From positions 897,218-961,217 of the forward strand of contig NIVC01000114.1 of NCBI GenBank assembly GCA_002269645.1: 64,000 nt of DNA, given 5' to 3'. Positions 234 through 45,001 of this stretch are shown piece after piece; within the stretch, counting starts at the first letter, position 1, and every line of letters starts with the position of its first letter. The notes under the pieces are model-generated. The model saw only the letters and a list, made by a program, of their open reading frames with translations, was not told where the DNA came from and ran no database searches. A program made the position numbers and the translations under genes. The stretch is from Macrostomum lignano (lineage: Eukaryota).

Positions 234-3200
234 GTGCCGTTGCCATCAATGCACCTGCCGCCATTGAGGCAAGCGCCCGTTGGACAGTCGTTGTGGTTGA
301 AGCTGCAGTTCCTGCCCTCCCAGCCTGTGAAGCAGCTGCAGCTGTAGTTTTTCAGCAGGTCCGTGCACAGGCCGTTGATGCAGGGCTTGCTGGCGCAGTC
401 ATCAATGTTGCTTTGGCACTTGTCACCTGCGAATCCCGTGTCTGTGCAGTCGCAGGTGAATCTGAAAAGAGGATAAAATTCAGCTCTATTGTTACAGAAA
501 TGGTTGGAAATCCGAGTTTTCTATTGGCGGTTCCGGTAATAAATTTTAAGAACTTTTACAAACGAAAATTGTAAAACTCGGAGTAAGGTTTTATAGTTTC
601 GAAATCCTACTTACACCGCAACCCTATATTAGCTGCAGTAGCCACTACAGAAACAAACTTATCATTTGAAACTGGAAAACAACCAGCCCGTAACTTTAGT
701 AAAAAATTGGAGGATGTGCGCATCAAGTCATGGCTGTCTTGTCAGACATCGCTGCCTCCAGGAAAACCCATTTTGTCTATAGGGTGTTGAGAATGCGGAG
801 CACTTCATCTGTGAATGCCCCGCCTTTACTCAGGACAGGCTCTTCTACCTTGGCACAAACCCGGGCCTTTCCGACGGTTTCAGGGCCGAGAATTTCTGCA
901 AGCTCGTCCGCTACTTAAAGGCTACCGGGCTAGACTCGATCCACCCCTTGGACTCTCCAGAGGGGGACCACGGTGCGGTCACCGGCACCACCGGATCTCC
1001 ATGTGTGAAACCGCAGTACCAGCTGCCCGCAGTGGCCAGGGTTAACAAAAGGGACTTCAACGCCTCCCCGCTGCATCCAGACTCCAAGAACCCCTGCAGC
1101 TGAGTCAAGTCAACAAGGAGAACTCACGTGCCGTTGCCATCAATGCACCTGCCGCCATTGAGGCAGGCGCCGGTTGGACAGTCGTTGTGGTTGATGTTGC
1201 AGTTCCTGCCCTCCCAGCCTGTAAAGCAGCTGCAGCTGTAGTCATTCACCAAGTCTGAGCACAGGCCGTTGGCGCAGGGCTTGCTGGCGCAGTCATCAAT
1301 GTTGATCTCGCAGTCGGTGCCTGTGAAGTTAAAAAGGAATTTCAAAAATAGCAAAGAAAATCATCTTGCTTGTTCGCTTTCCTGATTCAGCACAATTTTT
1401 TTAACGAAAAGTCAATTTCAAGCGGAAGTCAAAGCATCAAATGCACAAAACCTCGAATGTTTCTTATCGCCTTCCAGACAGTGCAGAACAGAAACGAAAG
1501 CGGAAAGCTGAGCAATGTCACTCAAAGCAGCCTGAATGTTCCTGGCAACCAGAGCACCATGCGCTAAAAGCATGTCTATCATGCATGTATTACGCGTACT
1601 AAAGATGAATAGCATTGTCTCAAACTGCAGACAAATCAAATATTATATTGGCACTACAGGGGCTAAGGGGGCGCCTAGGAGGTGCCGCTCTTTGATTAGA
1701 TTTGAGTACAATCTGAGTAGGTACGGGCTACAATAGAAAACTCGCACACAAAGCCATCATAACCATAAAGTGAAAAAAAAAAATTCTGAATGGTGACAGA
1801 GCGAGCAGCACCGATTTCTGGCCATGAACAGATATTTCTTGTGCGATGAACGGAAAGAGCAATCGAAACGTGGCGATAGCTGGGCGCCCCTGTCTCTAAG
1901 ATGGGCGCTCCAGTCTCTGAGGTGGGCGCCCCTGTCTCTAAGATGGGCGCTCCAGTCTCTGAGGTGGGCGCCCCTGTCTCTGAGGTGGGCGCCCTGTCTC
2001 TGAGGTGGGCGCCTCTGTCTCTGAGGTGGGCACCCCTGTCTCTGAGGTGGGCGCCCCTTTCTCTGAGGTGGCCGCTCCTGTCTCTGAGGTGGCCGTCCCT
2101 GTCTCTGAGGTGGGCGCCCCTGTCTCTGAGGTGGGCGCCCTGTCTCTGAGGTGGGCGCCCCTGTCTCTGAGGTGGGCGCCCTGTCTCTGAGGTGGGCGCC
2201 CTGTCTCTGAGGTGGGCGCCCTGTCTCTGAGGTGGGCGCCCTGTCTCTGAGGTGGGCGCCCTGTCTCTGAGGTGGGCGCCCTGTCTCTGAGGTGGGCGCC
2301 CCTGTCTCTGGGGTTGGCGCCCCTGTCTCTGAGGTGGGCGCCCTGTCTCTGAGGTGGGCGTCCCTGTCTCTGAGGTGGGCGCCCTGTCTCTGAGGTGGGC
2401 GCCCCTGTCTCTGGGGTTGGCGCCCCTGTCTCTGAGGTGGGCGCCCTGTCTCTGAGGTGGGCGCCCCTTCTTTGAGGTTGGCGCTCATGTCTGTGAGGTT
2501 GGCGCTCCTGTCTCTGAGGTGGGCGCCCCTGTCTCTGAGGTGGGCGCCCCTGTCTCTCGGGTTGGCGCCCTATAGCTACATGAAATTCCGAAGCTGGTGT
2601 TGCCATTTTCAAGAGGTGGCAAAAGTTGAGCCTTTGTCATTTAACGAGATTGTTTAAATCTTTCCTTCAGTTTTTAATGATAAAAATTTTGGTAGGGTGC
2701 AATTTTATCCACCCCGCCTCCATTCGCTATCTCTCTGCAGCCACTGAGTATTTGTAGCAATTCAGTAGTTTGGCTTACATCTTTTTTTGCTATGCATTTT
2801 GTCAAAAAGGTAAACCAACAAAACAAAAAATCAATATTTAACAGTCAAATGGCTTTCTATTATTAATATATTTTCTCAGGCAATTCGCAGGTGCGTCAAT
2901 TTCAACTGGCTTTGCCCCACCTGGTCACCCACCTGTGTAGCCGGGAACGCAGCTGCAGTGATACCAGGGGCTCGCGTCTGAGTTGCTGCAGGTGCCTCCG
3001 TTTTGGCAGGGATTGGAGACTGTAGCGCCACCGTCCGAAGATATAGCACAGAAGTTTATTCTATCAGTGCAATATGTACCAGTGTACGCGTCAGGGCACA
3101 GACACGGAGGAGTGCTTGACGTCACAGCACCCGGCCAGCAAATGCCGCCATTCTTGCAGTCGCCCTCGCTGCAGGCGGCTCGCCTCGTCCGCGCCAATTC

Positions 3201-4698
3201 GTTGGCGTCCTCGTCGAACTCTGCAAAACAATTTTGGCGTTTAAAATTATCAGAATTTATTTGATAGGTCAGATAATTCAGTAAAATCCGGTTTTTAGAA
3301 ACCCAGCAACCAAAGCATGTTGCGCTAAAACTTCACTATCTATCAAGCATATATGTATACTAGAGCTTGATAGCCGCAAGCTTGAAAGAAAATCTGAAGG
3401 ATAACATTGATAGCTGCAGTGGCGAACGCAGGAATTATAATTCGGGGCCCTAAAGGGGCGACAATATTCGGTGTCTTGGATTAAAAAACTGAAATCTCGC
3501 TTGTATAGAAGATTACTCATGACATGATCAGCTGAGCACAATCAAAATTTGAATCGTTGCATCAGCGAGCAATGCGATTTGATTCGAGTAGAATATGAGT
3601 AGATACGAGCTACGATAAAGAACCTGGACACGCAAGCATCCTAATAATGAAATAGAAATTCAAAACTTCCGAATGGTGGCAGAGCCAGCAGCAGCGGATC
3701 CTGAATTGAAACTGATTTCTTCTAAGACTTGTGCGATGAACAGAAGAAGCAATGGAAACGTGACGATAGCGTTTTGGCGCCCCCAAACACTTTGTTAGGC
3801 GCCCCTGTCTCTTGGTGGGCGCTCCGGACTCTTAAGTGGGCGCCCATATAAGAAACCGGAGACAGGACACACTAAAAGATTTTTTATTTTATAAAGCCAA
3901 ATTAATTTGATAGGACATGCAGATTTGCTAATTAAGTCGCTTAAGCTTAATTGCGTCGGCTGCATCAGCTAAAATTGTGATCTAAAAACTATTTTGTATC
4001 TAACAGTTGCGATTCTGAGAAAAACTGAGCAAATTTCATTTACGTTAGATTCATTTGGGGCTTGTGTGCACGGAAGTTGGCCCGGAGATTGTCGTGTGAT
4101 TTACCGCAATGAAGGCCAGCCAACAAGGCACAAAAAGTGTACGAGCTACATGCCTGACGATTACAAATCCAGGGTCACTGTGGACCCAATGCTCAGAAGT
4201 CGGTGGAATTACCGTCAGCGCTTTCTTTGGGACAATGTCGTCAAAGGCGCTGCGCCAGTTTGCCTACAGTCCTAATTCAAATATTTTTGTTCGTATTTTA
4301 TCAAAGCCTGACACATCAGGTGTGTGCGGGCTATGGAATCCATTGGATCCGGACAGACTGTCGCTCCGATGAGCAGCCGAATATATTCTGGAATTGAAAT
4401 GCTATCCAAAGACCAAGAGCTTTTCAGTGTCTAGATTTTAACAAGAACATGGCGTGTTATAGAGTTCACATCTGGGTCCTTCTCATGGGCTCTTAGGGTT
4501 ATTTCGGTACTTTAATTGGCATTCGTATTATAAAAAAGCAAGCTTTACCGAAGAAAACATTAGCAAGCGTAAAAATCACGTCAACTCACCAGCTGACTGT
4601 AAATCCTTTGAAACGGACTTGGAAGAGACCAGAGATGCCAGGTTTAACATCAAGATTATTTCCAAAGTCAGTAGCAGCTGTGCTTTGCATGAAAACAT
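234..4698 (-). CDS. Crumbs-like EGF receptor, copy C (5' part; continues beyond window start)
   Basis: Exons 4698-4590 (signal exon nearly identical to copy B), 3220-2933 (RTRR plus 2 EGF), 1320-1128, 461-234 (FTCDCTDTGFAGDKCQSNIDDC...CIDGNGT). GT-AG sites, in frame. Confidence 0.78.
717..1113 (+). mobile_element. 3' remnant of a related LOA-type LINE (zinc knuckle plus tail) in a gene C intron
   Basis: SHGCLVRH...NAEHFICECPAFTQDRLFYLG...AENFCKLVRYLKATG. Tail CCCTGCAGCTGAGTCAAGTCAA. Confidence 0.8.
1657..2746. mobile_element. MITE-like element (CAGGGGC...GCCACTG) containing an expanded 20-21-bp minisatellite (about 1880-2575)
   Basis: Unique part is similar to 3417-3870 and 15626-15890. Unit GGGCGCCCCTGTCTCTGAGGT. 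Confidence 0.6.
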
Positions 4699-5448: not shown

Positions 5449-8400
5449 TCACAAGTGGGTACTTTCAAGTGGCTGACAATTATGAGATGCGACATCGCCA
5501 GGTATGCCAGTTTCATCAGGTACCTAATTATGGTGTGTCATTTTAATTGGGGTACTTGAAATGTATGGCTTGTTGTATAGATAGCTGGCTTCTGTGAAAT
5601 GGTGGCTGGGTTTTGTGAGATGGCTGCTGGCTTTTGTGAGATGGTGGCTGGCTTCTGTGAGATGGTGGCTGGGTTTTGTGAGGTGGTGGCTGGCTTCTGT
5701 GAGATGGTGGCTGGATTTTGTGAGATGGTGGCTGGGTTTTGTGAGATGGTGGCTGGGTTTTGTGAAATGGTGGCTGGGTTTTGTGAGATGGTGGCTGGGT
5801 TTTGTGAGATGGCTGCTGGCTTTTGTGAGATGGTGGCTGGCTTCTGTGAGATGGTGGCTGGGTTTTGTGAGGTGGTGGCTGGCTTCTGTGAGATGGTGGC
5901 TGGATTTTGTGAGATGGTGGCTGGGTTTTGTGAGATGGTGGCTGGGTTTTGTGAAATGGTGGCTGGGTTTTGTGAGATGGTGGCTGGTTTTTGTGAGATG
6001 GTGGCTGGGTTTTGTGAGATGGTGGCTGGGTTTTTTGAAATGGTGGCTGGGTTTTGCAAGATGGTGGCTGGCTTCTGTGAGATGGTGGCTGGGTTTTGTG
6101 AGATGGTGGCTGGGTTCTGTGAGATGGTGGCTGGGTTTTGCAAGATGGTGGCTGGCTTCTGTGAGATGGTGGCTGGGTTTTGTGAGATGGTGGCTGACTT
6201 TTGTGAGATGGTGGCTGACTTTTGTGAGATGGTGGCTGGGTTTTGTGAGATGGTGGCTGACTTTTGTGAGATGGTGGCTGGGTTTTGTGAGATGGTGGCT
6301 GACTTTTGTGAGATGGTGGCTGGGTTTTGTGAGATGGGGGCTGGGTTTTGTGAAATGGTGGCTGGGTTTTGTGAGATGGTGGCTGGTTTTTGTGAGATGG
6401 TGGCTGGGTTTTGTGAGATGGTGGCTGGGTTTTTTGAAATGGTGGCTGGGTTTTGCAAGATGGTGGCTGGCTTCTGTGAGATGGTGGCTGGGTTTTGTGA
6501 GATGGTGGCTGGGTTCTGTGAGATGGTGGCTGGGTTTTGCAAGATGGTGGCTGGCTTCTGTGAGATGGTGGCTGGGTTTTGTGAGATGGTGGCTGGCTTC
6601 TGTGAGATGGTGGCTGGGTTTTGCAAGATGGTGGCTGGCTTCTGTGAGATGGTGGCTGGGTTTTGTGAGATGGTGGCTGACTTTTGTGAGATGGTGGCTG
6701 ACTTTTGTGAGATGGTGGCTGGGTTTTGTGAGATGGTGGCTGACTTTTGTGAGATGGTGGCTGACTTTTGTGAGATGGTGGCTGGGTTTTGTGAGATGGT
6801 GGCTGGGTTTTGTGAGATGGTGGCTGGGTTTTGTGAGATGGTGGCTGGGTTTTGTGAAATGGTGGCTGGGTTTTGTGAGATGATGGATGGGGCTGTGAGA
6901 TGGTGTATGGGTTCTGTGACAAGATGCCTGGGTTCTAGGCTTCCTTGAATAAATGAATAAATAGTATATTTATCCTAATAATATAAATGAGATGTTACAT
7001 TGAAATGTAGAGATTATTACCTGTTCTAATGATTGACCCTCGGGAAGACCGACGCCCTCATCTCTGGCAGTGGAAGGCAGGGCTCGACCAGTATTGGCTC
7101 TCTATAGCGCAACAAAAAATGCTAATTTGTGAAAAAAACATTCTTTAGGTTTTTTACGTTAACATGGTTAGTACAGAATTTTATTTCTTATTTATTTCCT
7201 TCGATCAAATCGGTCAATCGAGCTTTAAATTTGTGGTTTACGTGGTCTAAATAACTTGATCGTTAGAGTTAATCAGTTTAAACATAATTTTAAATGTTTT
7301 TTTGAAATTGTACATACCAGTTTGCCTACACAATTACACCTTTTCACGTTCAATCCTGAACAAAGTCCAGTTCCAAAAAAACTAGCGGAAATTCAATTCA
7401 GACAATTCAGACTGGGGACAATTTTGTCTATGGCTAAACCTCGCTTCCGTAGCAGAATGTTTTGAACTGGGGTTTGTTGCCCCAGTCTGAATTGTCTGAA
7501 TTGAATTTCCGCTAGTTTTTTTAGAACTGGACTTTGTTCAAAATTGAACGTGAAAAGGTGTAGTAAATTTGAGATAATACACTAGAGCTTGAAATATTGT
7601 AGAAAGATAAATAAAAATTCCGTACCTGTCAAAGATGCTCGAGTCAAAGGACTATGGGTACATTTTAACAAAAAAAGACTTGTTCATTGAGAATTTATAA
7701 CACATAGTCGCACTTACTAAGCAAACGTAGCTAGCGTCCTGTCTACCATCAGTCTGCAGTGGATTTTCGTAAGTGTACATCTAAATTCGAAGAATTGATA
7801 TGCCATGTTAGTTATTTACTGCAACCACACATCGTGTGAAGTTATTACACAACTAAAGAAACTTACCGCGCTAGACTCTCTTTGATCAGGGGCAAGGTAG
7901 CCACTGCTAGGACGCAGCTCTACATTTGCGTCTGCCTGGGACACCGGCTGGCTTCCATTGGATTCTCTGTCAGAGGCAGCGCTTTGAGAAGTTGGACGAC
8001 GATTCAGCTTCTTTTTTAAACAAACTGCTAGTAAAGATGCTGGAATGAAGTCATAGATGAATGGGTATGTTATTTGGGGCATGTTGGGGTTCTGTGGGAT
8101 GATGGATGGGTTCCGTGAGATGGTGGATGGGCTCTGTGATATAATAATAATAACTGATTTCACCTGCCCTAATGGACAGATGTGCAACCGACAGCTCAGC
8201 CGCAGCTATTGCGCGGCGCATCTGAAGTATGCTTAGGGCTGTTCAGTCTGTCGACTGTGGTTGGGGGTCGCCACACACCCTCAAATACCCCAGCTAATGC
8301 TGGTACCCATTTTACAGCTGGGTACTCAGGCACATTGTCTCATGAATGTATTTTTAGTAGCCGTAAATAGTGATTTCGAAGCGTTGAATAATGAGCGTAC

Positions 8401-11400
8401 AGCATGGGACAATGCTTATTTTTTACGGCTACGAGCCGGGCCGAAATATTTTGAGGGCATTATCTTCTTCTTATCTTTGAAGACCTCTTTATGATATGTA
8501 TGCCTTTTAGTACTAACTATGTCTATGGGCAAGCCTGCGAGCTGAAGTTGAGCTGGATTAAAAGAGAGACAGTTCGCTAAGTTAGACGCTAACGCGCGAG
8601 AAATACACACGGCGTAAAAGCCAGAGCCTTGAGCTGACTAAACTTCTAAGTTGCTTTACTTAGTGACTACGTGATTTGTGCAAAGACGTAACACTTTAGC
8701 ACTCTAAACGGAGGCAAATACCTTACAAAACTTGATGCCACGCAGTCCTTTCTTCAGCTGGAGCTTGATGAAGATTCTAAGAAATATATGGTACTCAACA
8801 TGCTCAAAGACTATATCAGTGTCGACAGTTGCATTATGGCTTGGCAAGCGGACAAGCTGTGTTCCAAATGGCAATGGACAAGATACTTCAAGGACTAAAT
8901 CGTTTAATTGGCTTCATAGACGATATCATGGTGGTTTGCAAAAACTTCGAAGAGCATTTGAACAACTTAACAACCGTGTAACAACGTTTCCGAGAACGTG
9001 GTGTAAGGCTAAAGAAATCAAAATGTAAATTTATGCTCGAATCCATAACGTTTATTGGATACAGAATGGACAAGAATGGAATCTACCCCACTGAAGATAA
9101 GTGCAGGCCATTCGAGATGCACCTAGACCTCAGAGTATTTCGGAATTAAGAGCTTGGCTTTGTTTAGTCAACTAGTACGGGAAGTTGATTCAGAACCTTT
9201 CTGCATTAATGCATCCATTCTATAAACAATTGCAAAAGGATTGAAAAATAATTTGACTGGTCAAATGATTGCGAGTCTGCTTTTGGAGAAATAAAGAAAC
9301 AGCAAATGTCGAACAAAGTACTGATGTACTATGATTCGACGAAGAAGTTAAATTGGAGTGCGATGCTTCATCATATCGTCTTGGAGCAGTGATCTCACAT
9401 GAAACACCGACAGGCGACAGTCTGATTGCATACGCATCAATGACTCTATCTTCTGCTGAAAAGAACTACGCCCAAATCGATAAAAAGGCTTTGGCTATAA
9501 TTTTTAGTCTAAAAAAGTTTCACGAGTATTTGTTAGGTCACTCATTAACATAAGTGACGGACCACAAGCCTCTCGTACCAATATTTGATTCAAGAAGACC
9601 AATTCCGCCAGTTGCAGCCAGCCGATTGCAAAGATGAGCTATGTTTCTCGGTGCGCACTCGTAAGACATTGAAGTTAGAAACACTGACTGCCACTGCAAT
9701 GCTAATGAGCTATCAAGACTCCCAGAAAACTTCGCCGACACGAAAGAAACTACGACGTAGCTCCAGCTTGATCCAGCAAGTCCTAATCAGTAGGCTTCCT
9801 GTACAGGCTAAGGTCATCGCAGAGGAAACTTTGAAGGATCCAGTACTCAAAAAAGTATTGACTCGATCTAGACAAGAATGACAGGATTCTTCAAAACAAC
9901 GCTGAGCGTCTCAGCTGACGCTGAGTTGAAGCCGCACACGAAAAAGACACGAGTTTGGTATAAAATCTGAGGTGATCCTGCTGGGAATGCGAGTAGTAAT
10001 ACTATATGCTCTACAGCACTTGGTTCTTGAAGAACTTCATGAGGGTCACCCGGGTATGGTCCTCACAAAATCAAGGGCCAGAATGTACTGCTGGTGGCCC
10101 CAGATAGACAAGGATATAGAAGCAGCGTGAGCCACTGCCGGAGGTGTCAATTGCATCGTTCAAATCCACCTAAAGCACCCCTAAGCCCATTCTCGTGGCC
10201 TACTACTCTTTGGACGAGAATTTATGTAGACTTTGTGGAACCATTCAAGTCCTGGATGTTTTTGGGTGACGTTGATGCTACTAGTAAGTTCCCTGCACTC
10301 ATTCACATGAAGAAAGCAACATCTAAGAATAAGATTGGGTCATTGAGAGAAATCTTTGTCCGATTTGGTTTGCTCAAGACCCAAGATCAAAGAAATTGTC
10401 CGAAAATATGGTAAAACAAATAAAAAATGCATTGAAAGCATCGGCAAAGGTGACATGCGAAAACAACTTTCAAATTTCTTATTCCGAGCCAAAAACAACA
10501 CCTCACAGCACAACTGGAAAGACTCCAGCTGAACTTCTTTTTGGTAGAAATCTAGGAAAAAACTGCCATTTCTCTTTCCGGGCGCGGAATCGAAAGTTCT
10601 GTGTGTCCAGAACAAGAAAAATAGTATTATGATGACGCAAAAATAACTGCGTCTGTGGAATTTTCTTTCGGAGAGCGAGTCCAGATAAAATATTTACGAC
10701 GAGGAAAAGCCAGATGGACTATATGGACTATACTGAGACGTACAGCCCATTAACACATACTCTGTTAGAGTCGGTGATCTACTTTGGAAGCGACATGCGA
10801 ATTAGCTTCTGAAGACTAGACAACGACTACAAGCGACCATTGAACCAAAGCTGGAATGGAATGATTTCAAAGTAACTATTTCTTCAGAAACAGAGCAGGA
10901 TGCTTCACATGCTACAGAAAAGTCAAATGCAAGCAGTGGTCAGTCTCCGAAGGAAATTGGATTGAACCAACAACTTGGACGTGGTTACAATCTAAGGAAT
11001 AGAGGATTGCTAAAGATGCCTGTACGATACCAGGCAGGAAAGGGAGAGGTGTAGTATCTATGGAAATACTTATGCGTTGACTTGCTAAGTCAAGCTCGCT
11101 AGTAAAAAATTACACACACACACACACGCACACCCCACTCCTTATTTTGTTACGGCTACAACCAGGCCAAAATATACTGAGGGCATAATCTTCTTCTCTG
11201 TCAACCGATACCTCGCGTCTTTGCGTTCCTTACTTCAACTGTTCTGATTTAGGTCGAGGATCGAACCTCGACCTTCCTGTCGTGAGTCCGACGCTCTAAT
11301 CACTAGGCTACAACCCCCATATGAGTGCTGTGAGACGATGGATCGGGTCTTTGAAATAATAGATGGGATCTGTGACATGGTGAATGATGTGATAATGATG

Positions 11401-17256: not shown

Positions 17257-17981
17257 TGCGGATCAACGGTTATGTTTGATTGTGGTTTCTATTGAAGCTG
17301 CAATCAGTCTTGATCGACTTGGAGAAATGTTCTCGAGGCATGAAGTATTAGTGCGATTTTTTATTTAGGATGCGACAAAGACCCAATTCCCTCTAATTTC
17401 GAAGTTTTGAACTGATTAGAAAACATGAATAACTAAAAACATTGACGGCTTTAAAAAATTAAAACTGTCGCCTTTACTAACTAATAATTATTTATTTATC
17501 GTGCAAATTACGAGCCACTAAAGACGTACGCTCCATTTAAAATAAAATCTACAAAATACATGTAATTGAATTTGTTTTAATGCTTGGATAAATTGTATCG
17601 ACGCTAAAACAGACGCTTAATATGATTTACCGATCATGTCATCATAAGTAGGTCTTTACTGATTACTGCCAAAACACAGCGCACTGCTGGCTAACACTGT
17701 ATTTTAGAAAGTCAGGGGGTCTAGAGTAACATTGTGCAATAAACAAACTAATCAGTGCGTTCAGTGACTCATGACATGCAATAGAATAAATTTCACTTGT
17801 TTGTTTTACTCTGAGCGTTTAAAACTACAGAAAGTAACAGCAGTGAAGTAATCGCAACCAGCTGGTAAGAAATGCAAAAAAATAACAAACAAAAATACAT
17901 TTAACAGATAATACATGTAGAGTGAATTGCTAATTTATAAGTAATGTATGAAGACAGTGTTTTTGAAAATTGCGCAAAGTC

Positions 17982-20900
17982 TCATGAAATCGGAGCATCA
18001 TAGGTATTATCAGGTTGCTGGCCATCATGAAATGCGACATCGCCAGGTGCGACAGCTTCATCAGGTACCTAATTGAGTATTTTAGTTTGGGTATGCAAAA
18101 TGTTCAGCTGGTTGTATAAATTTCAGGCTTCTGTGAGATGATGGATGCATTCTGTGAGATGATGGATGGGATCTGTGAGATTGTGGATGGATTCTGTGAG
18201 ATGGCGGATAGATTCTGTGAGATCGGGGATCGATTCTGTGAGATGATGGATGAATTCTGTGAGATGATGAATGAATTCTGTGAGATGATGGATGAACTCT
18301 GTGAGATGGGGGGTCAATTCTGTGAGATGGGGATCGATTCTGTGAGATGATGGATGAATTCTGTGAGATAGGGGATCGATTCTGTGAGATGATGGATAAA
18401 TTCTGTGAGATGATGGATGAATTCTGTGAGATGGTATATGGATTCTGTGTTTTCTTGAGTAAATCTATAAGTACATATATCCTAATAATTTAAGTGCAAT
18501 GCACCTGCTCCAACGATTGATCCTCGGACAGATCGATGCCCTCATCGGTCGGAGTGGGTGGCAGGGCTCGACCAGCATTGGCTCCCTGGTAAAACATTAA
18601 ATTTCCGTTTTTAAAAAATAATCATGTTTTATTGGTTCTTGACGTTAACATTGATTAAAACAAACTTTTGTTCATTACTTTTCAATCAAATCGGCAATGA
18701 ATAGGTTTTTTATTTGTTCTATTTTTTTCGTGATCTACAAGATTTGATTGTTCTTTAGAACGAAAAACTTTAAAAAATGATTTGTAAACTTTTAATTTTA
18801 GATAAATTTACGAGTAGATAAATAGAACTTAAAGATCTTGTATATAGGTAAATATAAATTCCATACATGCAAGAGAGCTTGACTAAAGTGACCATTGGCA
18901 CATTTTAACAAAAAAGTAAACTTGTTGATTTAAAATCCAGAACACAATTTCACACTTACTAAACAAACGTAGCTAAGAGAACCGGGCAAACCAGTATCCT
19001 GACTACCGTCCGCCTCGAGTGGATTTTCGTAAGTGTACACCTAAATTTGAAGAAAAAATATGCCAAGTTAGTTTTCTACTGCAACTACACATCGCGTGAA
19101 GTTATTAGTCTTATTACACAATTAAAGAAACTTACCGCGCTAGAGTCTCTTTGATCAGCGACAAGGTAGCCACTGCTAGGACGCAGCTCTACATTTGCGT
19201 CTGCATGAGGCACCGGCTGACTTCCATTGGATTCGCTGTCAGAGGCAGCGCTTTGAGAAGTTGGACGACAATTTAGCTTCTTTTTTAAATAAACTGCTGA
19301 TGATGCTGGAATGAAGTCATCGATAAATGGGTGTCTTATTTGGGGCATGTTGGGGTTCTGTGGGATGATGGATGGGTTCTGTCAGATGGTGGATGGATTC
19401 TGTGAGATGGTGGATGGGTTCTGTCAGATGGTGGATGGGTTCTGTGAGATGATTGATGGATTCTGTCAGATGATGGATAGATCCTGTGAGATGATGGATG
19501 GATTCTGTGAGATGGTGGATGGGTTCTGTGAGATGGTGGATGGGTTCTGTGAGATGGTGGATGGGTTCTGTGAGATGGTGGATGGGTTCTGTGAGATGGT
19601 GGATGGGTTCTGTGAGATAGTGGATGGGTTCTGTGAGATGGTGGATGAGTTCTGTGAGATGATGGATTGGGTCTTTGAAATAATAGATAGGTTCGGTGAC
19701 ATGGTGAATGATGTGATGATAATGAGTTTTTTCAGCACATGTATCTTTTCTACCCCTCACCGATAGCAATCAAGATGACAACAACAAGCGCGGCGCCAAC
19801 CGCAACAACAATAGCTGTGGGAAAATCAGCAGGTGACGCATCCTTGACGGAACACTCTTTGCCAAGAAATCCAGCAGGACAGTCGCATTTGAAGTCGTTC
19901 CAAAGAGCCACACATTGGCCACCATTTAAGCAGACATTGGAAGGAGTTTTCTGGCAAACCACGTCGCCATGACAACCAGTCAGGATTGAAGACGCAGCCA
20001 TCCAATTAAATCCCGAATAACCGCTTGGCAGGGAGCGATTGACGAGTGGCACCAAGTAACCGTTGAGTCGCAAGTTGTCAAGGCAACCCTTGAATCCGGG
20101 GCCCCCAGCTGTAACCGTAGCAGAAGAATCCAGGATCAAACCAGCTGGAATCGGCGTTGTGTCTGCCAACACCCGGAAATCGCTAGCATTGGTCGACACA
20201 CCAGCGGTCAAAAAGCCACCCTCAGCACAACTAATACTGAAGTTAAATGGTAAACCTGTTGCTATGGAAACCGCCACCAATACTGTCCGGTCGTTAAGAG
20301 AGACTTTAAAGTGTCCGGACTCGCAACCAACTGACAGCTGATGACTGCCGCTGAGCACGGTCAGTAGATGGCAGTCTGACTGACGAGTGCGGGCCCAGCC
20401 GGTAACCGCAGTCAGAGTTTCGTTGAGACCAGTCACCGATAATGCAATCTGGCTGCTTGATGGCGATATCAGAGAGCTGCCAAATGTTGCAGCTGTGCGG
20501 CCTGAGTTTCAGAGGAAATTTAGCCACATGTCAAAATAGAAATACAAGAGAGTGCTACTAACAGTAGTCTATAACTCACACTCAAATCCGCCAGAGTCCA
20601 ATTGTACGCACTTCGTTCCGTTAGGGCAGTATTGGTCAGCAAAATAACAATGGTCTTTCATTGTACAATTGGGTCCGAACCATCCCTCAGTGCAGTTGCA
20701 CCTGTGAAAACAGTTACACGGCAAGAAGATTTTAATTTATCGCCAACTGGTCAAGAAACAGCTATCTACAACTCACGTATAGGAATTGTAGAAAGCATTA
20801 GTGCAAACAGCTCCGTTCTTGCAAGGCAAGAATGTCTGGCAAGCATTCTCCGTAGATACGCCAGTGAGCACTGATGAGTAGCTAGCTGAGACAGCCTCTG

Positions 20901-23900
20901 GCAAGCTGTCGATCAAGCTGGAGGTTACAGGACCGAGAATCAGTGGCCGGTCACCGTTCAGTCTCGCAGATCCAACGATGCCACGAAACGCGGTGATGTT
21001 GTCTGGCAACAGAGATGCGACGCCGCTAGGAAGACTCGGCGCTGATCTCTTTGACCGAGAGACACCAGCCGAAGAATCAACAAGCGACGGAGCCGGGGCT
21101 GCCCGAAGACCGCTGAAGCCGCCGATGATGAGCTGGCCTGACAGCTGCGGCAGCGGACTCGCACTGCTCAGCGATGCCGACCTGACTGAAGATGACACTG
21201 ACAGCGACAGCGAGCGACCCGATATCGACACGGAGATCTTCACGGACACGAAGCTGCCGGTGGCCACCGAGTCTGAGGACGTCAGCGCTGCGATGTGGGA
21301 GCCGTTGCCGTGCAGTAACTGGGCGGACAGACGGCCAGAATGATCGATCTGAAAAGATTGAAACAAATACTGAAAAAATCTGAAAATACTTTACAATCAA
21401 AGACATCAAAAAAGGACACTGACCGTAGCGAGCAGTCTCGGAGTGGTCGCCGAGTCGCTCGGGTCGCCCAGCAGAAGCAGAAACGCACCTCGAGACAAAG
21501 TCACCAGCCTCAGCTCAATCGTCCACGAGTTATTAGCAGTGAAATTCGAGTCAGCAGGAATTAGGGACAAAAAACTAGCTGATGAAGCGTTGCCGTCCAG
21601 TCCAAACGCAAAATCGGGAAGCTGGACCGAACAGTTGCGTCCCGTAAAGCTCCGCTCCAGGCTGCACACGCACCGGTAGTCGTGCAGGGGAGTCGGGAAC
21701 TCCTGCAAGAGAATCGGCTGGCACGTGGCGCCGTTCTGGCACCAGTTGGAGTCGCAGCCGGTGAGGCTCACCGAGCACTTCCTGCCGCCCAGTCCGGCAG
21801 GGCAGTTCGCGCACTCGAAATCCGCCAGCCGGTCGATGCAGGTCGCTCTGCTGGGACACGGCGGGGGCAGCGACCGACACTCGTCGATCTCTCGGCTGCA
21901 GTTTGAGCCCTCGTAGCCGGGCAGGCAGTGGCAGGTGAATGAGGCCAGGCCGTCCGTGCAGCTCGACGCGTGAACGCACACGCTGCGGTTGGTGGCCGGG
22001 TCCAGACAGTCGTTCGGGTTGATCTCGCAGTGGGTTCCATAGGCACCTGCACGAGAACTCGTAGATGTATTTTACGTGTAAAATGCTTCTAGAACAATTC
22101 CAGATAAGTAAAGCAAATCAAAACAGTACCAGATGGGCACCAGCAGATGTAGCCGGCAGCCATCGAATAGTTAAAGGTGCCGTTGAACGGTGGCGGGTAA
22201 CCAGCCAGTCCGTAGTACTTCTGGTTGCTGATCTCCAGACAACGACCCTCGTTTTTACACAGGTGCGGCGTGCAGTCCTCGTAGTCAAGGGAGCAGTCTG
22301 GGCCGGAGAATCCATCGTAGCAGTTGCAGGTGTAATTTCTGAACCCGTCGATGCAGGCCGCCCCGTTCTGGCACCGATTCGGCATGCAGTTGTCAATGCG
22401 GTTCTGGCAATTTGCGCCGTAAAAGTCCGTCATGGAACAGTCGCAGGTGTAACTTCTCAAGCCGTCGGTGCATTTGCCACCATTTTGACACGGGTTCGGT
22501 TGGCAATCGTTGATCCACAAGTTGCAATTTGTACCTTCGTAATCTGTGTCTTGACAATAGCACGTGTACCTGAGTAGGAGTAGTTATTACATGCAATTTA
22601 ATCCAATATACTAAAAATGAAAATCTTGCTTGTTTGTTTGTACGCAATCGATTAGAGAAAAAATGGCTGGACCGATTTTCATGAGATTTGCACTGTTCGA
22701 TCAGAAATTTGTACCTTCGTAATCTGTGTCTTGACAATAGCACGTGTACCTGAGTAGGAGTAGTTATTACATGCAATTTAATACGCTACTGATAGTCTAT
22801 TGTACCAGCGTTGGTGTTGAATCAATGTCAGATGTTTTACCATCAACTTCTCAATTAAAAAAAGAAGCAGCCTACTCCTACTTGCATGGTAAGTACATGC
22901 TTAACTCCTCTTATGAACTAACTACATTGTTACAAGCAGGGGCGTCGCCACCGGGGGGGGGGACATGCCCCCCCCCAGTAAAATCTATGGGGGGACATGA
23001 CAATGCTTTGTCCCCCCAACCCACCTTGTGACTCGTTGTGGAAAGCAAAAATTTTGTTTCAGGATGCTTAAATATAGCACCTGGGGCGCTAAAATGAGTA
23101 ACTGCAGCGCTAAAAAATAGCGCTGACAATCAGCAGGGGCGTCGCCATGGATTTTATGGTGGGGGGGGACAAAGCCAACAATTATACATGTACATGTACA
23201 TGACTAAGTTCCTACATGTACATTATTTTCAGAATTGGTATTGTCAGTACTCAATTTAGCGCCGCAGCCACTCATTTTAGCGCCGCAGATACTCATTTTA
23301 GCGCCACAGGCACTCATTTTAGCGTCACAGGCACTCATTTTAGCGCTGCAGGCACTCATTTTAGCGCTGCAGGCACTCATTTTAGCACCACAACACTCAT
23401 TTTAGCGCCTCAGGCACTCATTTTGGCGCCACAACACTCATTTTAGCGCCACAGCACTCATTTTAGCGCCGCAGGCACTCATTTTAGCGCCACAGCACTC
23501 ATTTTAGCGCCGCAGGCACTCATTTTGGCATGACCCCCCTGTTGGCGACGCCCCTGCTGAAAATTACACAACTTTCAAAATAATGTTACAGTAGGAATTT
23601 AGTCATGTATATGTAAATGTAAAACTCTGCTTTTTCCCCTTCATAAAATCTATGGCGACGCCCCTGGTTAAATGCTTGATTATTAAAGTTGTGTTCAGTT
23701 GAGCTTATTTGTGTTACAGATTTATTTGATCGCGTATACATGAGTAGATCGATGTACAAGCATGTTTTAGTTTGAATTGTTTTATTAATTAGTTATACAT
23801 GTACTCTATAGATGTAAGTGTAGTTAAGAAGAAACACAACTTCAAAAGTTATTAAAACACAAAAAACCAATATTTTAGCTGTGTGAACAAACATCATTGG

Positions 23901-24438
23901 TGACTTTTGATTGATTATAATGTAATTTTCTTCGTTATAACAAAAACTTTACATGTATATTTTAGTGTATGTTGTTCTTGAATGCACACATTTTTTGCCA
24001 CCTGGGCATGTTTAGAAGCGATGGTTAGAGACTCTAATCTATCGATTGTTTAGTTGCCAAGGCATCAGCAGCAAAACTTCAATCTTGCTTGAATTAACAT
24101 TTTTGCACACATTTTTGCCACCTAAGCATGTTTAGAAGCGATGGTTAGAGACTCTAATCTATCGATTGTTTACTTGCCAAGGCATTAGCAGCAAAACTTC
24201 AATCTTGCTTGTTAACACTGTGCTCAAGCTGTAGGACTCACGTCGTCTCTCCACTGCTACACAAGCCGCCGTTTTGACACGGCTTCGATTGGCAATAGTC
24301 CACGCTAGATGCGGCTCGCCGCGATGCAGTCAGCTGCAGTTCTAAGCCCTGGCAACTGCCCAGCAACCAGCAGCAGTGGAAATAGTAAACAAATAATAGA
24401 CTTTTGACAACCATAACTATCTGTAGACATTGTGCCAT
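17982..24438 (-). CDS. Crumbs-like EGF/laminin-G single-pass receptor, copy A (complete, 10 exons, about 1037 aa; signal peptide, about 10 EGF, 2 LamG, TM, long non-canonical tail)
   Basis: Exons 24438-24242, 22569-22130, 22046-21424, 21348-20777, 20701-20580, 20501-19761, 19305-19136, 19040-18960, 18585-18505, 18068-17982. All introns are GT-AG and phases match (3114 nt). Has the Crumbs-type inserted EGF (CLEISNQKYYG...FNYSMAAGYICWC), GGFEC-RTAATF leading into a LamG with FKGCLDNLRLNG, and TM AIVVAVGAALVVVILIAIA followed by KKK. Confidence 0.85.
18125..18440. repeat. 21-bp minisatellite variant GAGATGATGGATGAATTCTGT in the last intron of gene A
   Basis: Direct reading. Confidence 0.92.
19360..19670. 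repeat. 21-bp minisatellite variant GAGATGGTGGATGGGTTCTGT in the post-TM intron of gene A
   Basis: Direct reading. Confidence 0.93.
22937..23666. mobile_element. Nested hAT-like MITEs (TIR CAGGGGCGTCGCCA); inner copy 23134-23556 carries a 21-bp minisatellite
   Basis: TIR at 22937 and 23134, reverse complements ending 23556 and 23666. Outer flanks GTTACAAG / GTTAAATG (6/8 match). Confidence 0.75.
23991..24211. repeat. About 120-bp direct duplication in gene A intron 1
   Basis: TTTTTGCCACCT..GCATGTTTAGAAGCGATGG...CTTCAATCTTGCTTG occurs twice. Confidence 0.9.
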
Positions 24439-24955
24439 TGTGCCGTCTGAAGTATAAATTTGAAAACTCAACAAATGCAAGAATTGTGAAACTCTGCTAA
24501 CTCAAAATTGAAATCAAAACAGCCAAAGTTTAACTAGTGCAACAAATTAAAATTAATAATCATGAAAAACACATACTTTACTTAACTAAAAAGTTACTAT
24601 ATAAAAATCATAAGTCCGTATTTATTGTCAATTGGTATTTTAATAAACGATATATACATATATTAAATGTCTAATTAAAAATTTCTTCAAGCAAAGTTAA
24701 TTAGTGCGCAATATCTATTGTAGAATTTCTTGATACAATTATATTTTGACATTATTAATTGAATAGATATAAACAGAGAGAATGCTAGAGATAAAACAGA
24801 GCATAGTTAAAACACGCAAGTTACTAAAAAAACTATAAACTAAGAAAATTATCAAGCAGATGCACTACAGATTTACTAAAATCATAGCAAGAATAAAATT
24901 TGCAGTAGAATTTTCTTAAAAATGATCTAAGCTAAGTAAAGTATGCTCTTATAGT

Positions 24956-26858: not shown

Positions 26859-26949
26859 GCATATAAACGGTTTAGTCCTTTTAGGGAGCTTTCTTACAAA
26901 TATAAAGTACCTGAAATTAGGGCTAAAACATTTAAACTCTAATTTGTGG

Positions 26950-31655: not shown

Positions 31656-31769
31656 GAAGAATAATTATATGAAATAGGTTAAGTAGATTATTTAGACAGC
31701 TGGTGATATAGTAAAGCGTTGAAGGTATGTGTGCCCTTTACAGTTAAGGGTGACTCTCATACAGCCTAC

Positions 31770-39490: not shown

Positions 39491-39509
39491 TCATCCTTCC
39501 CGCTTTCAG

Positions 39510-43300: not shown

Positions 43301-43457
43301 GCCGATGGGCTGGAAGGCCGGGGAGTAGTCCGGTCGCAAGCGGTCCCCCTCCTGGTGTCGGGCCAGCCTTGAGGGTGCTATTGGCCTACTGCCCGGTCAG
43401 GTGGAGCGGCCGAGTGGGTACCGCGCCCCTTTGAGGGTAGCCTACCAACCTTTTATC

Positions 43458-44978: not shown

Positions 44979-45001
44979 CCAGAAATTGCATTTAATACAG
45001 T

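What the first reader, a model, noticed from the sequence alone, without database searches (positions are those of the whole stretch)
234..24446. Tandem family of Crumbs-ectodomain receptors rewired to a tyrosine-motif signalling tail
Seen: three head-to-tail paralogs with Crumbs-type ectodomains. In A and B the TM exon splices in frame to four tail exons giving about 130-140 aa. A's tail reads ...VYTYENP...GSLSYVCL|GANAGRALPPTP...NTYDAPIS*. Established: canonical Crumbs has a tail of about 37 aa with a FERM-binding GxY motif and terminal ERLI. I found neither here by eye. YENP fits pY-x-N (Grb2-type SH2), LSYVCL fits the ITIM consensus (S/I/V/L)xYxx(I/V/L), RALPPTP fits the class I SH3 ligand RxLPPxP, and YDAP fits pYxxP (Crk/Nck). 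Inference: a lineage-specific expansion that turned a polarity/adhesion ectodomain into variable, phosphotyrosine-signalling surface receptors, perhaps for recognition or immunity.
Basis: partly seen in the sequence, partly recalled or inferred. Interest (0 to 1): 0.85.

Follow-up and report, generated by a model that had tools for sequence, protein, structure and literature searches.

The report
Flatworm Crumbs copies with swapped tails
The window, from the flatworm Macrostomum lignano, holds a tandem array of duplicated Crumbs polarity-receptor genes in which the short, conserved Crumbs tail exon has been replaced by four small exons encoding an unrelated 130-residue tail; what that tail does, including any tyrosine signalling, is untested.

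Summary
On the minus strand lie three head-to-tail paralogs. Gene A (24438-17982) has 10 GT-AG exons and a clean 1037-aa ORF. Gene B (17256-5449) has 11 exons and 779 aa. Gene C starts at 4698 and runs off the window. A encodes a signal peptide, about 9 EGF domains, two LamG domains, one transmembrane helix and a tail of about 132 aa from four small exons. The organism is Macrostomum lignano.

The ectodomain is Crumbs-type. Outside this species the best full-sensitivity hits are named Crumbs proteins ending GTYSPS...ERLI. M. lignano also keeps canonical ERLI Crumbs genes, which form one clade with A and B (100% bootstrap). Canonical Crumbs and gene A share an intron at the same position inside the transmembrane helix, phase 1. 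Only the 3' exons differ, so the tail was swapped by exon replacement. No ERLI-type exon exists in the window. Other array members, supported by RNA-based annotation, carry two further unrelated tails.

The signalling reading is weak. B has lost RALPPTP, YDAP and the ITIM -2 residue. Only YTYENPL and SYVCL are shared. Tail dN/dS is about 0.6. YVCL also fits a sorting signal. Verdict: a real, apparently undescribed, lineage-specific Crumbs variant of moderate interest.

The parts
24242..24438 (-). Gene A exon 1: ATG, signal peptide (MAQCLQIVMVVKSLLFVYYFHCCWLLGSCQG), start of EGF1
   Evidence: The N-terminus is identical to the independent model A0A1I8G109.
22130..22569 (-). Gene A exon 2: EGF repeats
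21424..22046 (-). Gene A exon 3: EGF repeats and start of LamG1
20777..21348 (-). Gene A exon 4: rest of LamG1 (Pfam Laminin_G_2, residues 395-502) and first half of an EGF
20580..20701 (-). Gene A exon 5: second half of that EGF plus one more EGF
   Evidence: The exon is colinear with canonical Crumbs P0003.
19761..20501 (-). Gene A exon 6: LamG2, one EGF and most of the TM helix. It ends in phase 1 (ATCG|GTGAGG).
   Evidence: The intron position and phase match the canonical M. lignano Crumbs gene.
19136..19305 (-). Gene A tail exon 1: end of TM, KKKLNC stop-transfer, ...RPSSGYLVADQRDSSA
   Evidence: GC is 0.49 against 0.37 in the downstream intron. The exon is included in A0A1I8G109.
18960..19040 (-). 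Gene A tail exon 2 (81 nt, phase 0-0): VYTYENPLEADGSQDTGLPGSLSYVCL
   Evidence: The YTYENPL and SYVCL blocks are conserved in B.
18505..18585 (-). Gene A tail exon 3 (81 nt, phase 0-0): GANAGRALPPTPTDEGIDLSEDQSLEQ
   Evidence: GC is 0.62 against 0.25/0.34 in the flanking introns. The exon is included in A0A1I8G109.
17982..18068 (-). Gene A tail exon 4 and stop: VPDEAVAPGDVAFHDGQQPDNTYDAPIS*
   Evidence: Poly(A) signals lie at 17581, 17496 and 17365.
17148..17256 (-). Gene B exon 1: signal peptide MFSCKAQLLLTLEIILMLNLASLVSS..., phase-1 donor CTG|GTGAGT
16566..16853 (-). Gene B exon 2: EGF repeats
14589..14781 (-). Gene B exon 3: EGF pair
12746..13068 (-). Gene B exon 4: EGF repeats
12509..12680 (-). 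Gene B exon 5: an EGF, then the deletion junction (REIDVST). About 1.15 kb of A, including LamG1, is missing here.
12299..12420 (-). Gene B exon 6: half EGF plus one EGF
11480..12220 (-). Gene B exon 7: LamG, EGF and TM. It is 95% identical to A exon 6.
7867..8039 (-). Gene B tail exon 1
7718..7780 (-). Gene B tail exon 2: MYTYENPLQTDGRQDASYVCL, with an 18-nt in-frame deletion relative to A
7021..7101 (-). Gene B tail exon 3: RANTGRALPSTARDEGVGLPEGQSLEQ
5449..5523 (-). Gene B tail exon 4 and stop: VPDETGIPGDVASHNCQPLESTHL*. The end is shifted by indels relative to A.
4590..4698 (-). Gene C exon 1: signal peptide, identical to B exon 1
2933..3220 (-). Gene C exon 2: EGF repeats
1128..1320 (-). 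Gene C exon 3: EGF pair
234..461 (-). Gene C exon 4: a further, duplicated EGF pair. The gene continues beyond the window start.
8730..10630 (+). Ty3/gypsy-type retroelement fragment inserted in the TM-to-tail intron of gene B
   Evidence: RT_RNaseH Pfam hits. This intron is 3440 nt in B and 455 nt in A.
17057..17386 (-). 330-bp block, 99.4% identical to 4499-4828. It covers the upstream region, exon 1 and the start of intron 1 of B and C.

Best explanation
This is part of a Macrostomum lignano-specific tandem array of genes that arose by duplication of the animal polarity gene crumbs.

Each copy encodes a type I membrane glycoprotein. It has a signal peptide, EGF repeats, one or two LamG domains, a final EGF and a single transmembrane helix.

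The copies kept the ancestral intron that splits the transmembrane helix in phase 1. Downstream of that intron, the single exon encoding the 37-47-residue Crumbs tail has been replaced. That lost exon carried the FERM-binding ...GTY.PS... motif and the PDZ-binding ERLI end. In genes A and B, four small exons stand in its place. They encode an acidic, Ser/Pro/Asp-rich tail of about 130 residues, probably disordered, with no detectable relative.

Shown: the gene structure, the Crumbs origin, the shared intron and the absence of the two Crumbs tail motifs.

Inferred:
- The products can no longer recruit Pals1/Stardust-PATJ, or FERM proteins, through the canonical motifs. They are therefore uncoupled from the apical polarity complex.
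- They keep a Crumbs-like extracellular face.
- Whatever the tail does is done through short linear motifs. The best candidates are the two tyrosine blocks conserved between A and B, YTYENPL and SYVCL. These could serve as Yxx-hydrophobic sorting or endocytosis signals, or as phosphotyrosine docking sites.
- Copy B looks partly degraded.
For: Gene models:
- A gives a 1037-aa ORF over 10 GT-AG exons. B gives a 779-aa ORF over 11.
- In both genes, every tail exon is a GC-rich island (0.44-0.62) next to AT-rich intron (0.25-0.40 on at least one side).
- Between A and B, tail exons 1-3 differ only by substitutions and by in-frame indels of 3 and 18 nt. Splice sites are kept.

Organism and family:
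- The full HMMER search returned M. lignano proteins first.
- After those came proteins named 'protein crumbs' from Lingula, ticks, tardigrade, nematodes, Nematostella, molluscs, ants and fish.
- 46 of the 160 fetched proteins end in E[RK]LI.

Canonical Crumbs in the same species:
- P0003/P0151 ends ...RRKESGTYGPSKAE...PPPEERLI. P0154 ends ...SETGQYRPSKEE...TEERLI.

Scores and tree for LamG2+EGF:
- A scores 447 bits against B, 240 against canonical P0003, 168 against array member P0002, and 70 or less against other species.
- In the NJ tree, all M. lignano sequences form one clade (100% bootstrap). (A,B)+P0003 has 73% and adding P0002 gives 95%.

Shared intron:
- Canonical gene: ...VIIISV G|GTGAGT, a 3.2-kb intron, then TTCCAG|TT GCA... 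ERLI*.
- Gene A...LIAI G|GTGAGG, then TTCCAG|CA TCA....

Other points:
- There is no ERLI-type exon in the window.
- The A tail has no significant similarity to the canonical tail or to the other array tails. It has no Pfam domain and no hit in the word-indexed protein search.
- Array members P0004 and P0007 come from the RNA-seq-guided Mlig_3_7 annotation (PMC5730564). They carry two other non-ERLI tails, so tail replacement in this family has RNA support.
- Canonical crumbs lies tail-to-tail, about 6-9 kb from an array member, on three contigs.
Against: - No transcript or protein evidence was obtainable for the A/B-type tail itself. The only database model that covers it (A0A1I8G109) is a chimeric prediction. 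It uses tail exons 1 and 3, skips 2 and 4, and runs on into gene B.
- A-versus-B nucleotide identity in the tail exons (80-91%) is no higher than in the adjacent introns (66-92%).
- Tail dN/dS is about 0.6, against 0.33-0.47 for the ectodomain. Purifying selection on the tail is at best weak.
- The C-terminal end differs between A and B because of frame-shifting indels.
- B carries a deletion that leaves a half EGF, and a retroelement in an intron.
- The NJ tree covers one domain pair and has no explicit non-Crumbs outgroup.
Confidence: 0.78

Rival explanations
1. The new tail turns the Crumbs ectodomain into a phosphotyrosine-signalling receptor, with Grb2-type YENP, ITIM LSYVCL, SH3 ligand RALPPTP and Crk/Nck YDAP. 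The array would be a variable recognition or immune receptor family.
For: - All four motifs are present in A. Only 0.07% of composition-preserving shuffles carry all four.
- YTYENPL and SYVCL are conserved between A and B while the linker between them varies. There are 2/36 against 9/27 nucleotide mismatches, Fisher p = 0.006.
- A second, unrelated, RNA-supported tail in the array (P0007) is also Tyr-rich, with YDRI, YAGV and YDNL.
- Paralogs differ in domain content.
Against: - The motifs were chosen after seeing the sequence, so the joint shuffle probability is not a test.
- Singly, the motifs arise in 21%, 18%, 6% and 41% of shuffles.
- B has lost RALPPTP (now RALPSTA), YDAP (early stop) and the ITIM -2 residue (now ASYVCL).
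- Tail dN/dS is about 0.6.
- Ectodomain dN/dS of 0.33-0.47 gives no sign of diversifying selection.
- YVCL fits the generic Yxx-hydrophobic AP-2 sorting signal equally well (established knowledge).
- There are no expression or phosphorylation data.
Confidence: 0.15
2. The copies, B above all, are decaying by-products of segmental duplication in a neopolyploid, repeat-rich genome. The 'tail exons' would then be neutrally drifting or non-functional sequence with no new role.
For: - Tail exon identity is about the same as intron identity, and tail dN/dS is about 0.6.
- B has an in-frame deletion that removes LamG1 and half an EGF, a retroelement in an intron, and a shifted C-terminus.
- M. lignano has 180-312 Mb of duplicated sequence (PMC5730564).
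Against: - Both A and B keep complete ORFs over 10 and 11 exons, with every splice site intact.
- Exon indels are in frame except at the very end.
- The tail exons are GC islands, as the other exons are.
- Ectodomain dN/dS is below 0.5.
- Related members with other tails are transcribed.
Confidence: 0.2
3. A, B and C are not separate genes but one long or polycistronic unit, as in the database model A0A1I8G109. The TM and tail exons would be alternative or mis-called.
For: - The UniProt model fuses A and B.
- The gap from the last poly(A) signal of A (17365) to the ATG of B (17256) is about 110 nt.
- About 7% of M. lignano transcripts are polycistronic precursors resolved by SL trans-splicing (PMC5730564).
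Against: - B and C each begin with their own signal-peptide exon. Its phase-1 donor matches the phase-1 acceptor of the next exon.
- A ends in a stop codon followed by poly(A) signals.
- The fusion model garbles LamG2 relative to the RNA-supported paralog P0003. It enters B exon 1 at an internal AG.
- A TM helix in the middle of a fused ectodomain makes no topological sense.
- Co-transcription followed by trans-splicing would still give separate proteins.
Confidence: 0.05

Closest known systems
Canonical Crumbs (Drosophila Crb; vertebrate CRB1/CRB2; here M. lignano P0003/P0151 = PAA62533.1 and P0154 = PAA89249.1)
   Same: - Type I membrane protein with alternating EGF and LamG domains.
- The LamG1-EGF-EGF-LamG2-EGF module aligns colinearly with Crumbs of other phyla.
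- 53% identity to M. lignano canonical Crumbs over LamG-EGF-TM.
- Identical phase-1 intron inside the TM helix.
- One EGF between the last LamG and the membrane, as in the M. lignano canonical gene.
   Different: - The tail is about 130 aa from four exons, not 37-47 aa from one.
- There is no juxtamembrane R..GTY.PS FERM-binding motif and no C-terminal ERLI.
- The ectodomain is shorter, with about 9 EGF and 2 LamG in A and 1 LamG in B.
- The genes are organised as a tandem array.
CRB3-CLPI, the alternative-3'-exon isoform of mammalian CRB3 (PMC2064851)
   Same: It is a Crumbs family member whose ERLI end is exchanged for an unrelated C-terminus by use of a different 3' exon. The new end redirects the protein to other partners (abstract).
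   Different: - CRB3-CLPI is a splice isoform of one gene that also makes the ERLI form. Here the swap is fixed in separate paralogs, and no ERLI exon is in the locus.
- CRB3 has almost no ectodomain.
- The tails are unrelated.
Other members of the same M. lignano array (P0004 = PAA90322.1, P0007 = PAA90326.1, P0002, P0005, P0006, P0008)
   Same: - 45-65% identical EGF/LamG ectodomains.
- An N-terminus like that of B and C (...DEDAGELARARRAACSEGDC...).
- Tandem arrangement on contig NIVC01000114.1.
- Non-ERLI tails.
   Different: - Their tails are of two other kinds...PTGVRVGHLRPDGMPPCPQEVFF and ...PYTFADYDRI...YAGVYETS...HTYDNLS... Neither shows significant similarity to the A/B tail.
- The A/B tail exons are absent from the four Mlig_3_7 loci fetched.
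Tyrosine-motif phagocytic or adhesion receptors with EGF ectodomains (Draper/CED-1/MEGF10 class)
   Same: They share, by general resemblance recalled from established knowledge only, an EGF-rich type I receptor with a disordered tail carrying tyrosine motifs.
   Different: - There is no NPxY and no YxxL-x(6-12)-YxxL ITAM in A or B.
- The ectodomain has LamG domains and groups with Crumbs.
- No homology was found.

Membership tests
Crumbs (CRB) family | Type I membrane protein whose ectodomain alternates EGF-like and laminin-G domains | tested here: met
   Pfam finds EGF (6 stretches) and Laminin_G_2. A profile of the second LamG plus EGF hits neurexin LNS, CELSR1 and laminin LG at E 1e-56 to 1e-20. 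The gene models have a signal peptide and a single TM helix.
Crumbs (CRB) family | Ectodomain most closely related to Crumbs orthologs rather than to other EGF/LamG families | tested here: met
   Top hits from other species are named 'protein crumbs' and end in ERLI. All M. lignano copies, including the canonical ERLI genes, form one clade with 100% bootstrap, set among those Crumbs sequences. Caveats: the tree is NJ, covers one domain pair, and has no explicit non-Crumbs outgroup.
Crumbs (CRB) family | Short cytoplasmic domain with a juxtamembrane FERM-binding motif (R..GTY.PS) (PMC3564977) | tested here: not met
   The A and B tails are about 130 aa. The only G-Y is ...RPSSGYL..., 45 residues from the membrane. 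There is no significant alignment to canonical tails.
Crumbs (CRB) family | C-terminal PDZ-binding ERLI (PMC2064851, PMC3564977) | tested here: not met
   A ends ...YDAPIS* and B ends ...ESTHL*. There is no ERLI-type exon in the 64-kb window; the best tblastn E-value is 0.2.
Crumbs (CRB) family | Gene structure shared with the species' canonical crumbs: a phase-1 intron inside the TM helix | tested here: met
   Canonical gene...ISV G|GTGAGT ... TTCCAG|TT. Gene A...IAI G|GTGAGG ... TTCCAG|CA.
ITIM/ITAM-type phosphotyrosine signalling receptors | Consensus (S/I/V/L)xYxx(I/V/L) or a paired YxxL/I, conserved among family members | tested here: not met
   A has LSYVCL. B has ASYVCL, so the -2 position is lost. 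Neither has an ITAM spacing. The ITIM pattern arises in 18% of shuffles of the A tail.
ITIM/ITAM-type phosphotyrosine signalling receptors | Tyrosines are phosphorylated and recruit SH2 or PTB proteins | not testable with these tools
   This needs phosphoproteomics or peptide pull-downs.
Delta/Notch ligands (the database name of A0A1I8G109 is 'Delta-like protein') | An N-terminal MNNL/DSL module for Delta, or LNR/NOD/ankyrin modules for Notch | tested here: not met
   Pfam finds only EGF-type and LamG domains in A. The PDB hits to Notch and Delta cover generic EGF repeats only.
Neurexin | LNS-EGF-LNS cassettes, with relatives that are neurexins | tested here: not met
   Neurexin is hit only at the fold/profile level in the PDB, where no Crumbs ectodomain is available. 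In the 1.84-billion-protein search, every one of the roughly 15 checked hits from other species whose source name identifies a family was called Crumbs, crumbs-like or CRB-1, apart from two EGF/LamG proteins (Salpingoeca 'fibropellin Ia' and an amphioxus 'receptor protein-tyrosine kinase'); none was called neurexin. Only about 30 of the 150 listed hits were looked up by name.

The most novel reading that the evidence does not exclude
Macrostomum has turned the Crumbs ectodomain into a modular receptor family. A conserved phase-1 intron in the TM helix acts as a socket into which at least three unrelated cytoplasmic exon sets have been plugged. Two of those tails are tyrosine-rich. The same extracellular recognition surface would thus be wired to different outputs: the polarity complex through ERLI, tyrosine-based signalling or sorting, and others. 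If the YTYENPL and SYVCL tyrosines are phosphorylated, this would be the first Crumbs-derived phosphotyrosine receptor.
Probability: 0.15. Interest if true: 0.7.

Novelty: new variant of a known kind. Interest (0 to 1): 0.45.

Why it matters
Crumbs is defined functionally by its tiny, almost invariant tail. The role of its large ectodomain is still poorly understood.

A natural set of paralogs that keep the ectodomain but have lost both tail motifs is a ready-made separation-of-function series. It occurs in an animal where transgenesis and RNAi work (PMC5730564). Such a series could show what a Crumbs ectodomain does when it cannot recruit Pals1/PATJ or FERM proteins.

It is also a clean example of protein rewiring by 3'-exon replacement at a conserved intron. 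It corrects misleading database names ('Delta-like protein', 'Cubilin', 'Neurogenic locus Notch protein') and a chimeric gene model.

The signalling claim, if confirmed, would raise the interest. As it stands, this is a lineage-specific curiosity in a highly duplicated genome.

Tried and rejected
1. Word-indexed protein search with the LamG2-EGF-TM exon and with the tail. Both gave no hits. The tool also missed M. lignano proteins that share long identical stretches with the queries. These nulls therefore say nothing about this species. They say only weakly that the tail has no close relative elsewhere.

2. Exact-sequence look-ups:
- The neighbouring short-chain dehydrogenase is not on record.
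- P0001 is not on record.
Hence no direct link from the window to a public contig or transcript.

3. Rfam and tRNA scans of the window found nothing.

4. A candidate signal peptide for B just after A's stop codon (MYFCLLFF..., about 17900) was rejected. It has no ATG in the copy upstream of C, and a far better conserved exon 1 exists at 17256.

5. Tail-to-tail comparisons of the A tail with the canonical, type 2 and type 3 tails were all within the shuffle distribution. No common origin can be claimed.

6. Cysteine parity as a test of B's integrity was abandoned. A's ectodomain also has an odd count.

7. Literature searches found nothing. The queries were M. lignano with crumbs, crumbs/ERLI with flatworm, and the Mlig locus tags.

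8. Notch/Delta and neurexin membership were rejected.

Full report
**What is in the sequence**

The region is eukaryotic and the genes run on the minus strand. A self-comparison shows a repeated unit. Segments 166-410, 1060-1304 and 14552-14765 are about 90% identical. So are 2896-3241 and 16529-16873 (86%). Segments 4492-5911 and 17050-18449 are 82% identical, 7561-8139 and 18799-19405 are 82%, and 11480-12452 and 19767-20731 are 94%.

I joined the open segments through the best GT-AG sites. Gene A then has 10 exons from 24438 to 17982 and a clean 1037-aa ORF. Gene B has 11 exons from 17256 to 5449 and a 779-aa ORF. Gene C has four visible exons from 4698 to 234 and runs off the window. The finding's coordinates (234-24446) bracket exactly this.

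A encodes a signal peptide, about nine EGF repeats and a LamG domain (Pfam Laminin_G_2, E 5.6e-8). Two EGFs follow, then a second, divergent LamG. Pfam misses this second LamG, but a family profile places it with neurexin LNS, CELSR1 and laminin LG structures (E 1e-56 to 1e-20). One EGF and one transmembrane (TM) helix follow.

**The tail**

The TM exon ends in phase 1 (ATCG|GTGAGG). Four small exons follow, all with good splice sites: 170, 81, 81 and 87 nt, the middle two in phase 0-0. They give ASSAVYLKKKLNC...SSGYLVADQRDSSA | VYTYENPLEADGSQDTGLPGSLSYVCL | GANAGRALPPTPTDEGIDLSEDQSLEQ | VPDEAVAPGDVAFHDGQQPDNTYDAPIS*.

B has the same four exons with their splice sites kept. It differs by a 3-nt and an 18-nt in-frame indel and by substitutions. 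Its last exon is shifted by indels and stops early (...ESTHL*).

In both genes each tail exon is a GC-rich island (0.44-0.62) next to AT-rich intron (0.25-0.40 on at least one side). The ectodomain exons look the same.

B and C each have their own first exon encoding a signal peptide (MFSCKAQLLLTLEIILMLNLASLVSS...). Its phase-1 donor matches the phase-1 acceptor of exon 2. So these are three genes, not one.

**Organism and family**

The word-indexed protein search found nothing. The full HMMER search of 1.84 billion representatives did. I queried it with the region from LamG1 to the C-terminus.

The best hit, P0001, is UniProt A0A1I8G109 of Macrostomum lignano. It is identical to my gene A over exons 1-4. 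However, it is a chimeric automated model. It garbles LamG2, uses tail exons 1 and 3, skips 2 and 4, and then reads into gene B.

The next hits are other M. lignano proteins, 45-65% identical. After those, the best hits from other species that carry a name are 'protein crumbs' from Lingula, a tick, a tardigrade and nematode CRB-1. Further down the list come Crumbs from Nematostella, molluscs, ants and fish CRB1. Of the 160 fetched proteins, 46 end in E[RK]LI, preceded by ...GTYSPS.QE....

The alignments to millipede and tardigrade Crumbs run colinearly from LamG1 through LamG2-EGF. The ectodomain is therefore Crumbs-type. Its database names ('Delta-like protein', 'Cubilin', 'Neurogenic locus Notch protein') are misleading, and no DSL, LNR or ankyrin module is present.

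**A canonical Crumbs exists in the same genome and is the nearest relative**

P0003/P0151 (PAA62533.1) ends ...KYVQNRRKESGTYGPSKAESRSNAHAQAQPPVRPPPEERLI. P0154 ends ...RNRRSETGQYRPSKEE...LRPPTEERLI.

For LamG2+EGF, gene A scores 447 bits against B. It scores 240 against canonical P0003, 168 against array member P0002, 110 against P0154, and 70 or less against any other species.

In an NJ tree, all M. lignano sequences form one clade (100% bootstrap) among Crumbs of other phyla. (A,B)+P0003 has 73% support, and adding P0002 gives 95%. The expansion is lineage-specific and it derives from crumbs.

**How the tail was changed**

I fetched the Mlig_3_7 contig region around array member P0004 (L002). 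On its opposite strand it holds a canonical crumbs copy, 92-100% identical to P0003.

In that canonical gene the TM exon ends ...VIIISV G|GTGAGT in phase 1. A 3.2-kb intron follows. A single last exon then starts TTCCAG|TT GCA GTG... and encodes VAVLLFKYVQNRRKESGTY...EERLI*.

Gene A has its intron at the same place in the helix and in the same phase (...LIAI G|GTGAGG; TTCCAG|CA TCA...). P0004 also has an intron within the C-terminal part of the helix.

So the ancestral intron was kept and the exon or exons downstream of it were replaced. The A tail shows no significant similarity to the canonical tail (51 of 500 shuffles score as high). It shows none to the two other tail types of the array either.

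No ERLI-type exon exists anywhere in the window. The best tblastn E-value is 0.2 with three canonical tails as queries.

**The wider family**

P0004 (PAA90322.1) and P0007 (PAA90326.1) lie on one 961-kb contig, about 80 kb apart. They carry two other non-ERLI tails...PTGVRVGHLRPDGMPPCPQEVFF and ...PYTFADYDRIRMHQ...SPYAGVYETSTDDHTYDNLS....

These GenBank models come from a genome-guided RNA-seq transcriptome (PMC5730564). Tail replacement in this family therefore has RNA support, though not for the A/B type.

On three contigs, canonical crumbs sits tail-to-tail about 6-9 kb from a member with the QEVFF tail. The window matches none of these loci at more than about 90% identity. The A/B tail exons are absent from them.

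**Is the tail under selection, and do the motifs mean anything?**

A-versus-B identity is 91, 84, 80 and 81% in tail exons 1-4. It is 66-92% in the adjacent introns and 86% in the 3' UTR. The block from exon 5 to the TM exon is 95-97% identical in exons and intron alike, which suggests recent gene conversion.

dN/dS is 0.33 for EGF-LamG2-EGF-TM and 0.47 for the N-terminal EGF block. It is 0.62 for the whole tail: 0.69 for exon 1 and 0.60 for exons 2-4. Constraint on the tail is therefore weak.

There is local structure, however. Within exon 2 the blocks YTYENPL and SYVCL have 2 mismatches in 36 nt, while the linker has 9 in 27 plus the 18-nt indel. Fisher p is 0.006, with block boundaries chosen post hoc.

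In composition-preserving shuffles of the A tail, each motif arises by chance at these rates:

| Motif | Shuffles containing it |
|---|---|
| YxN | 21% |
| ITIM pattern | 18% |
| [RK]xxPxxP | 6% |
| YxxP | 41% |
| all four together | 0.07% |

The motifs were picked after reading the sequence, so the joint figure is not a test.

B keeps only YENP and YVCL. It has RALPSTA, ASYVCL (ITIM -2 lost) and no YDAP. YVCL is equally a generic Yxx-hydrophobic sorting signal (established knowledge). No NPxY and no ITAM spacing is present.

**State of copy B**

Relative to A, B lacks about 1.15 kb (A 20731-21882), in frame. This removes an EGF region and LamG1 and leaves a half EGF (REIDVST|CNCTEGW).

Its TM-to-tail intron is swollen from 455 to 3440 nt by a Ty3/gypsy-type fragment with Pfam RT_RNaseH hits.

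B may be on its way to decay, yet every splice site and the reading frame are intact.

**Best explanation and rivals**

Shown:
- A tandem array of Crumbs-derived paralogs in M. lignano.
- A shared TM intron.
- Replacement of the single ERLI exon by four unrelated exons.
- Loss of both defining tail motifs.

Inferred:
- The proteins are uncoupled from Pals1/PATJ and FERM partners.
- They keep a Crumbs-like outside.
- They act, if they act, through short tyrosine-containing motifs used for sorting or for docking.

Confidence in the structural and evolutionary statement is about 0.8. I give the specific phosphotyrosine and immune-recognition reading about 0.15. Non-functional drift, at least for B, gets about 0.2. 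A single fused or mis-called gene gets about 0.05.

**Comparison with what is known**

The closest functional precedent is CRB3-CLPI. There an alternative 3' exon replaces ERLI and redirects the protein (PMC2064851). Here the exchange is fixed in separate genes with large ectodomains.

By descent these genes are Crumbs paralogs. By the two motifs that define Crumbs function (PMC3564977) they fail the membership test.

My literature searches found no description of this family.

**Verdict**

This is a new variant of a known kind, of moderate interest. The decisive step is junction-level RNA evidence and comparison with other Macrostomum genomes.

Noticed in passing
17057-17386 and 4499-4828: A 330-bp block has only 2 mismatches between the two copies, while the flanks are about 82% identical. 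It covers 130 nt upstream, the signal-peptide exon 1 and 91 nt of intron 1 of genes B and C. This points to recent gene conversion or strong constraint on the 5' end or promoter.
   Followed up: partly
12452-12516 in B, against 20731-21882 in A: Gene B has an in-frame deletion of about 1.15 kb. It removes LamG1 and joins a complete EGF to a half EGF (REIDVST|CNCTEGW). The original donor site is preserved.
   Followed up: yes
about 8730-10630, + strand: A Ty3/gypsy-type retroelement fragment sits inside B's TM-to-tail intron, with broken ORFs and Pfam RT_RNaseH and RT_RNaseH_2 hits. The intron is 3440 nt in B and 455 nt in A.
   Followed up: partly
1740-2710, 5540-6960, 15690-16330, 18100-18460, 19340-19720: Minisatellites of about 21 nt lie in introns of the array. 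They create ORFs of 150-480 aa in several frames on both strands, which are not genes. The intron after the TM exon of the canonical crumbs gene in L002 also opens with a short tandem repeat.
   Followed up: no
whole of genes A and B (24438-12509): UniProt A0A1I8G109 ('Delta-like protein', 1265 aa) is a chimeric automated model that fuses gene A to gene B. It skips tail exons 2 and 4 and mis-frames LamG2. Related entries are named 'Cubilin' and 'Neurogenic locus Notch protein', although they are Crumbs paralogs.
   Followed up: yes
17365-17581 against 17256: Poly(A) signals of gene A lie only about 110-325 nt upstream of the ATG of gene B. A possible acceptor (TTCAATAG) lies about 35 nt before that ATG. 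M. lignano uses SL trans-splicing, and about 7% of its transcripts are polycistronic precursors (PMC5730564). The array might be co-transcribed.
   Followed up: no
37101-38231 and 40790-41919: Two 1131-bp arms in inverted orientation are 99.8% identical. They flank about 2.5 kb that holds an ORF (39440-39982) with no Pfam hit. This is probably a mobile element with long inverted terminal repeats.
   Followed up: no
43401-48172 (+) and 60231-60886: A non-LTR retrotransposon has an ORF1 of 525 aa with no Pfam hit. Its ORF2 of 1056 aa carries endonuclease, reverse transcriptase and RNase H domains. A partial second copy is 89% identical.
   Followed up: partly
25815-26858 (-), 29764-31655 (-), 58171-59424 (+): Neighbouring genes are a single-exon short-chain dehydrogenase (adh_short), a two-ORF GT4 glycosyltransferase of ALG2 type, and a ZP-C domain protein. 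None belongs to the array.
   Followed up: partly
L002 27309-31516 (-), L003 10001-15424, L004 4193-9463: On three Mlig_3_7 contigs, the canonical ERLI crumbs gene lies tail-to-tail about 6-9 kb from an array member with the ...PTGVRVGHLR...QEVFF tail. The array and its parent gene are therefore physically linked. The arrangement is itself duplicated in this neopolyploid genome.
   Followed up: partly
26948-28196, 29087-29606, 31736-32480, 50598-50791, 54513-54891, 57104-57561: Further tandem-repeat arrays, with units of about 8-45 nt, lie outside the array. This is consistent with the 15% tandem-repeat content reported for this genome (PMC5730564).
   Followed up: no
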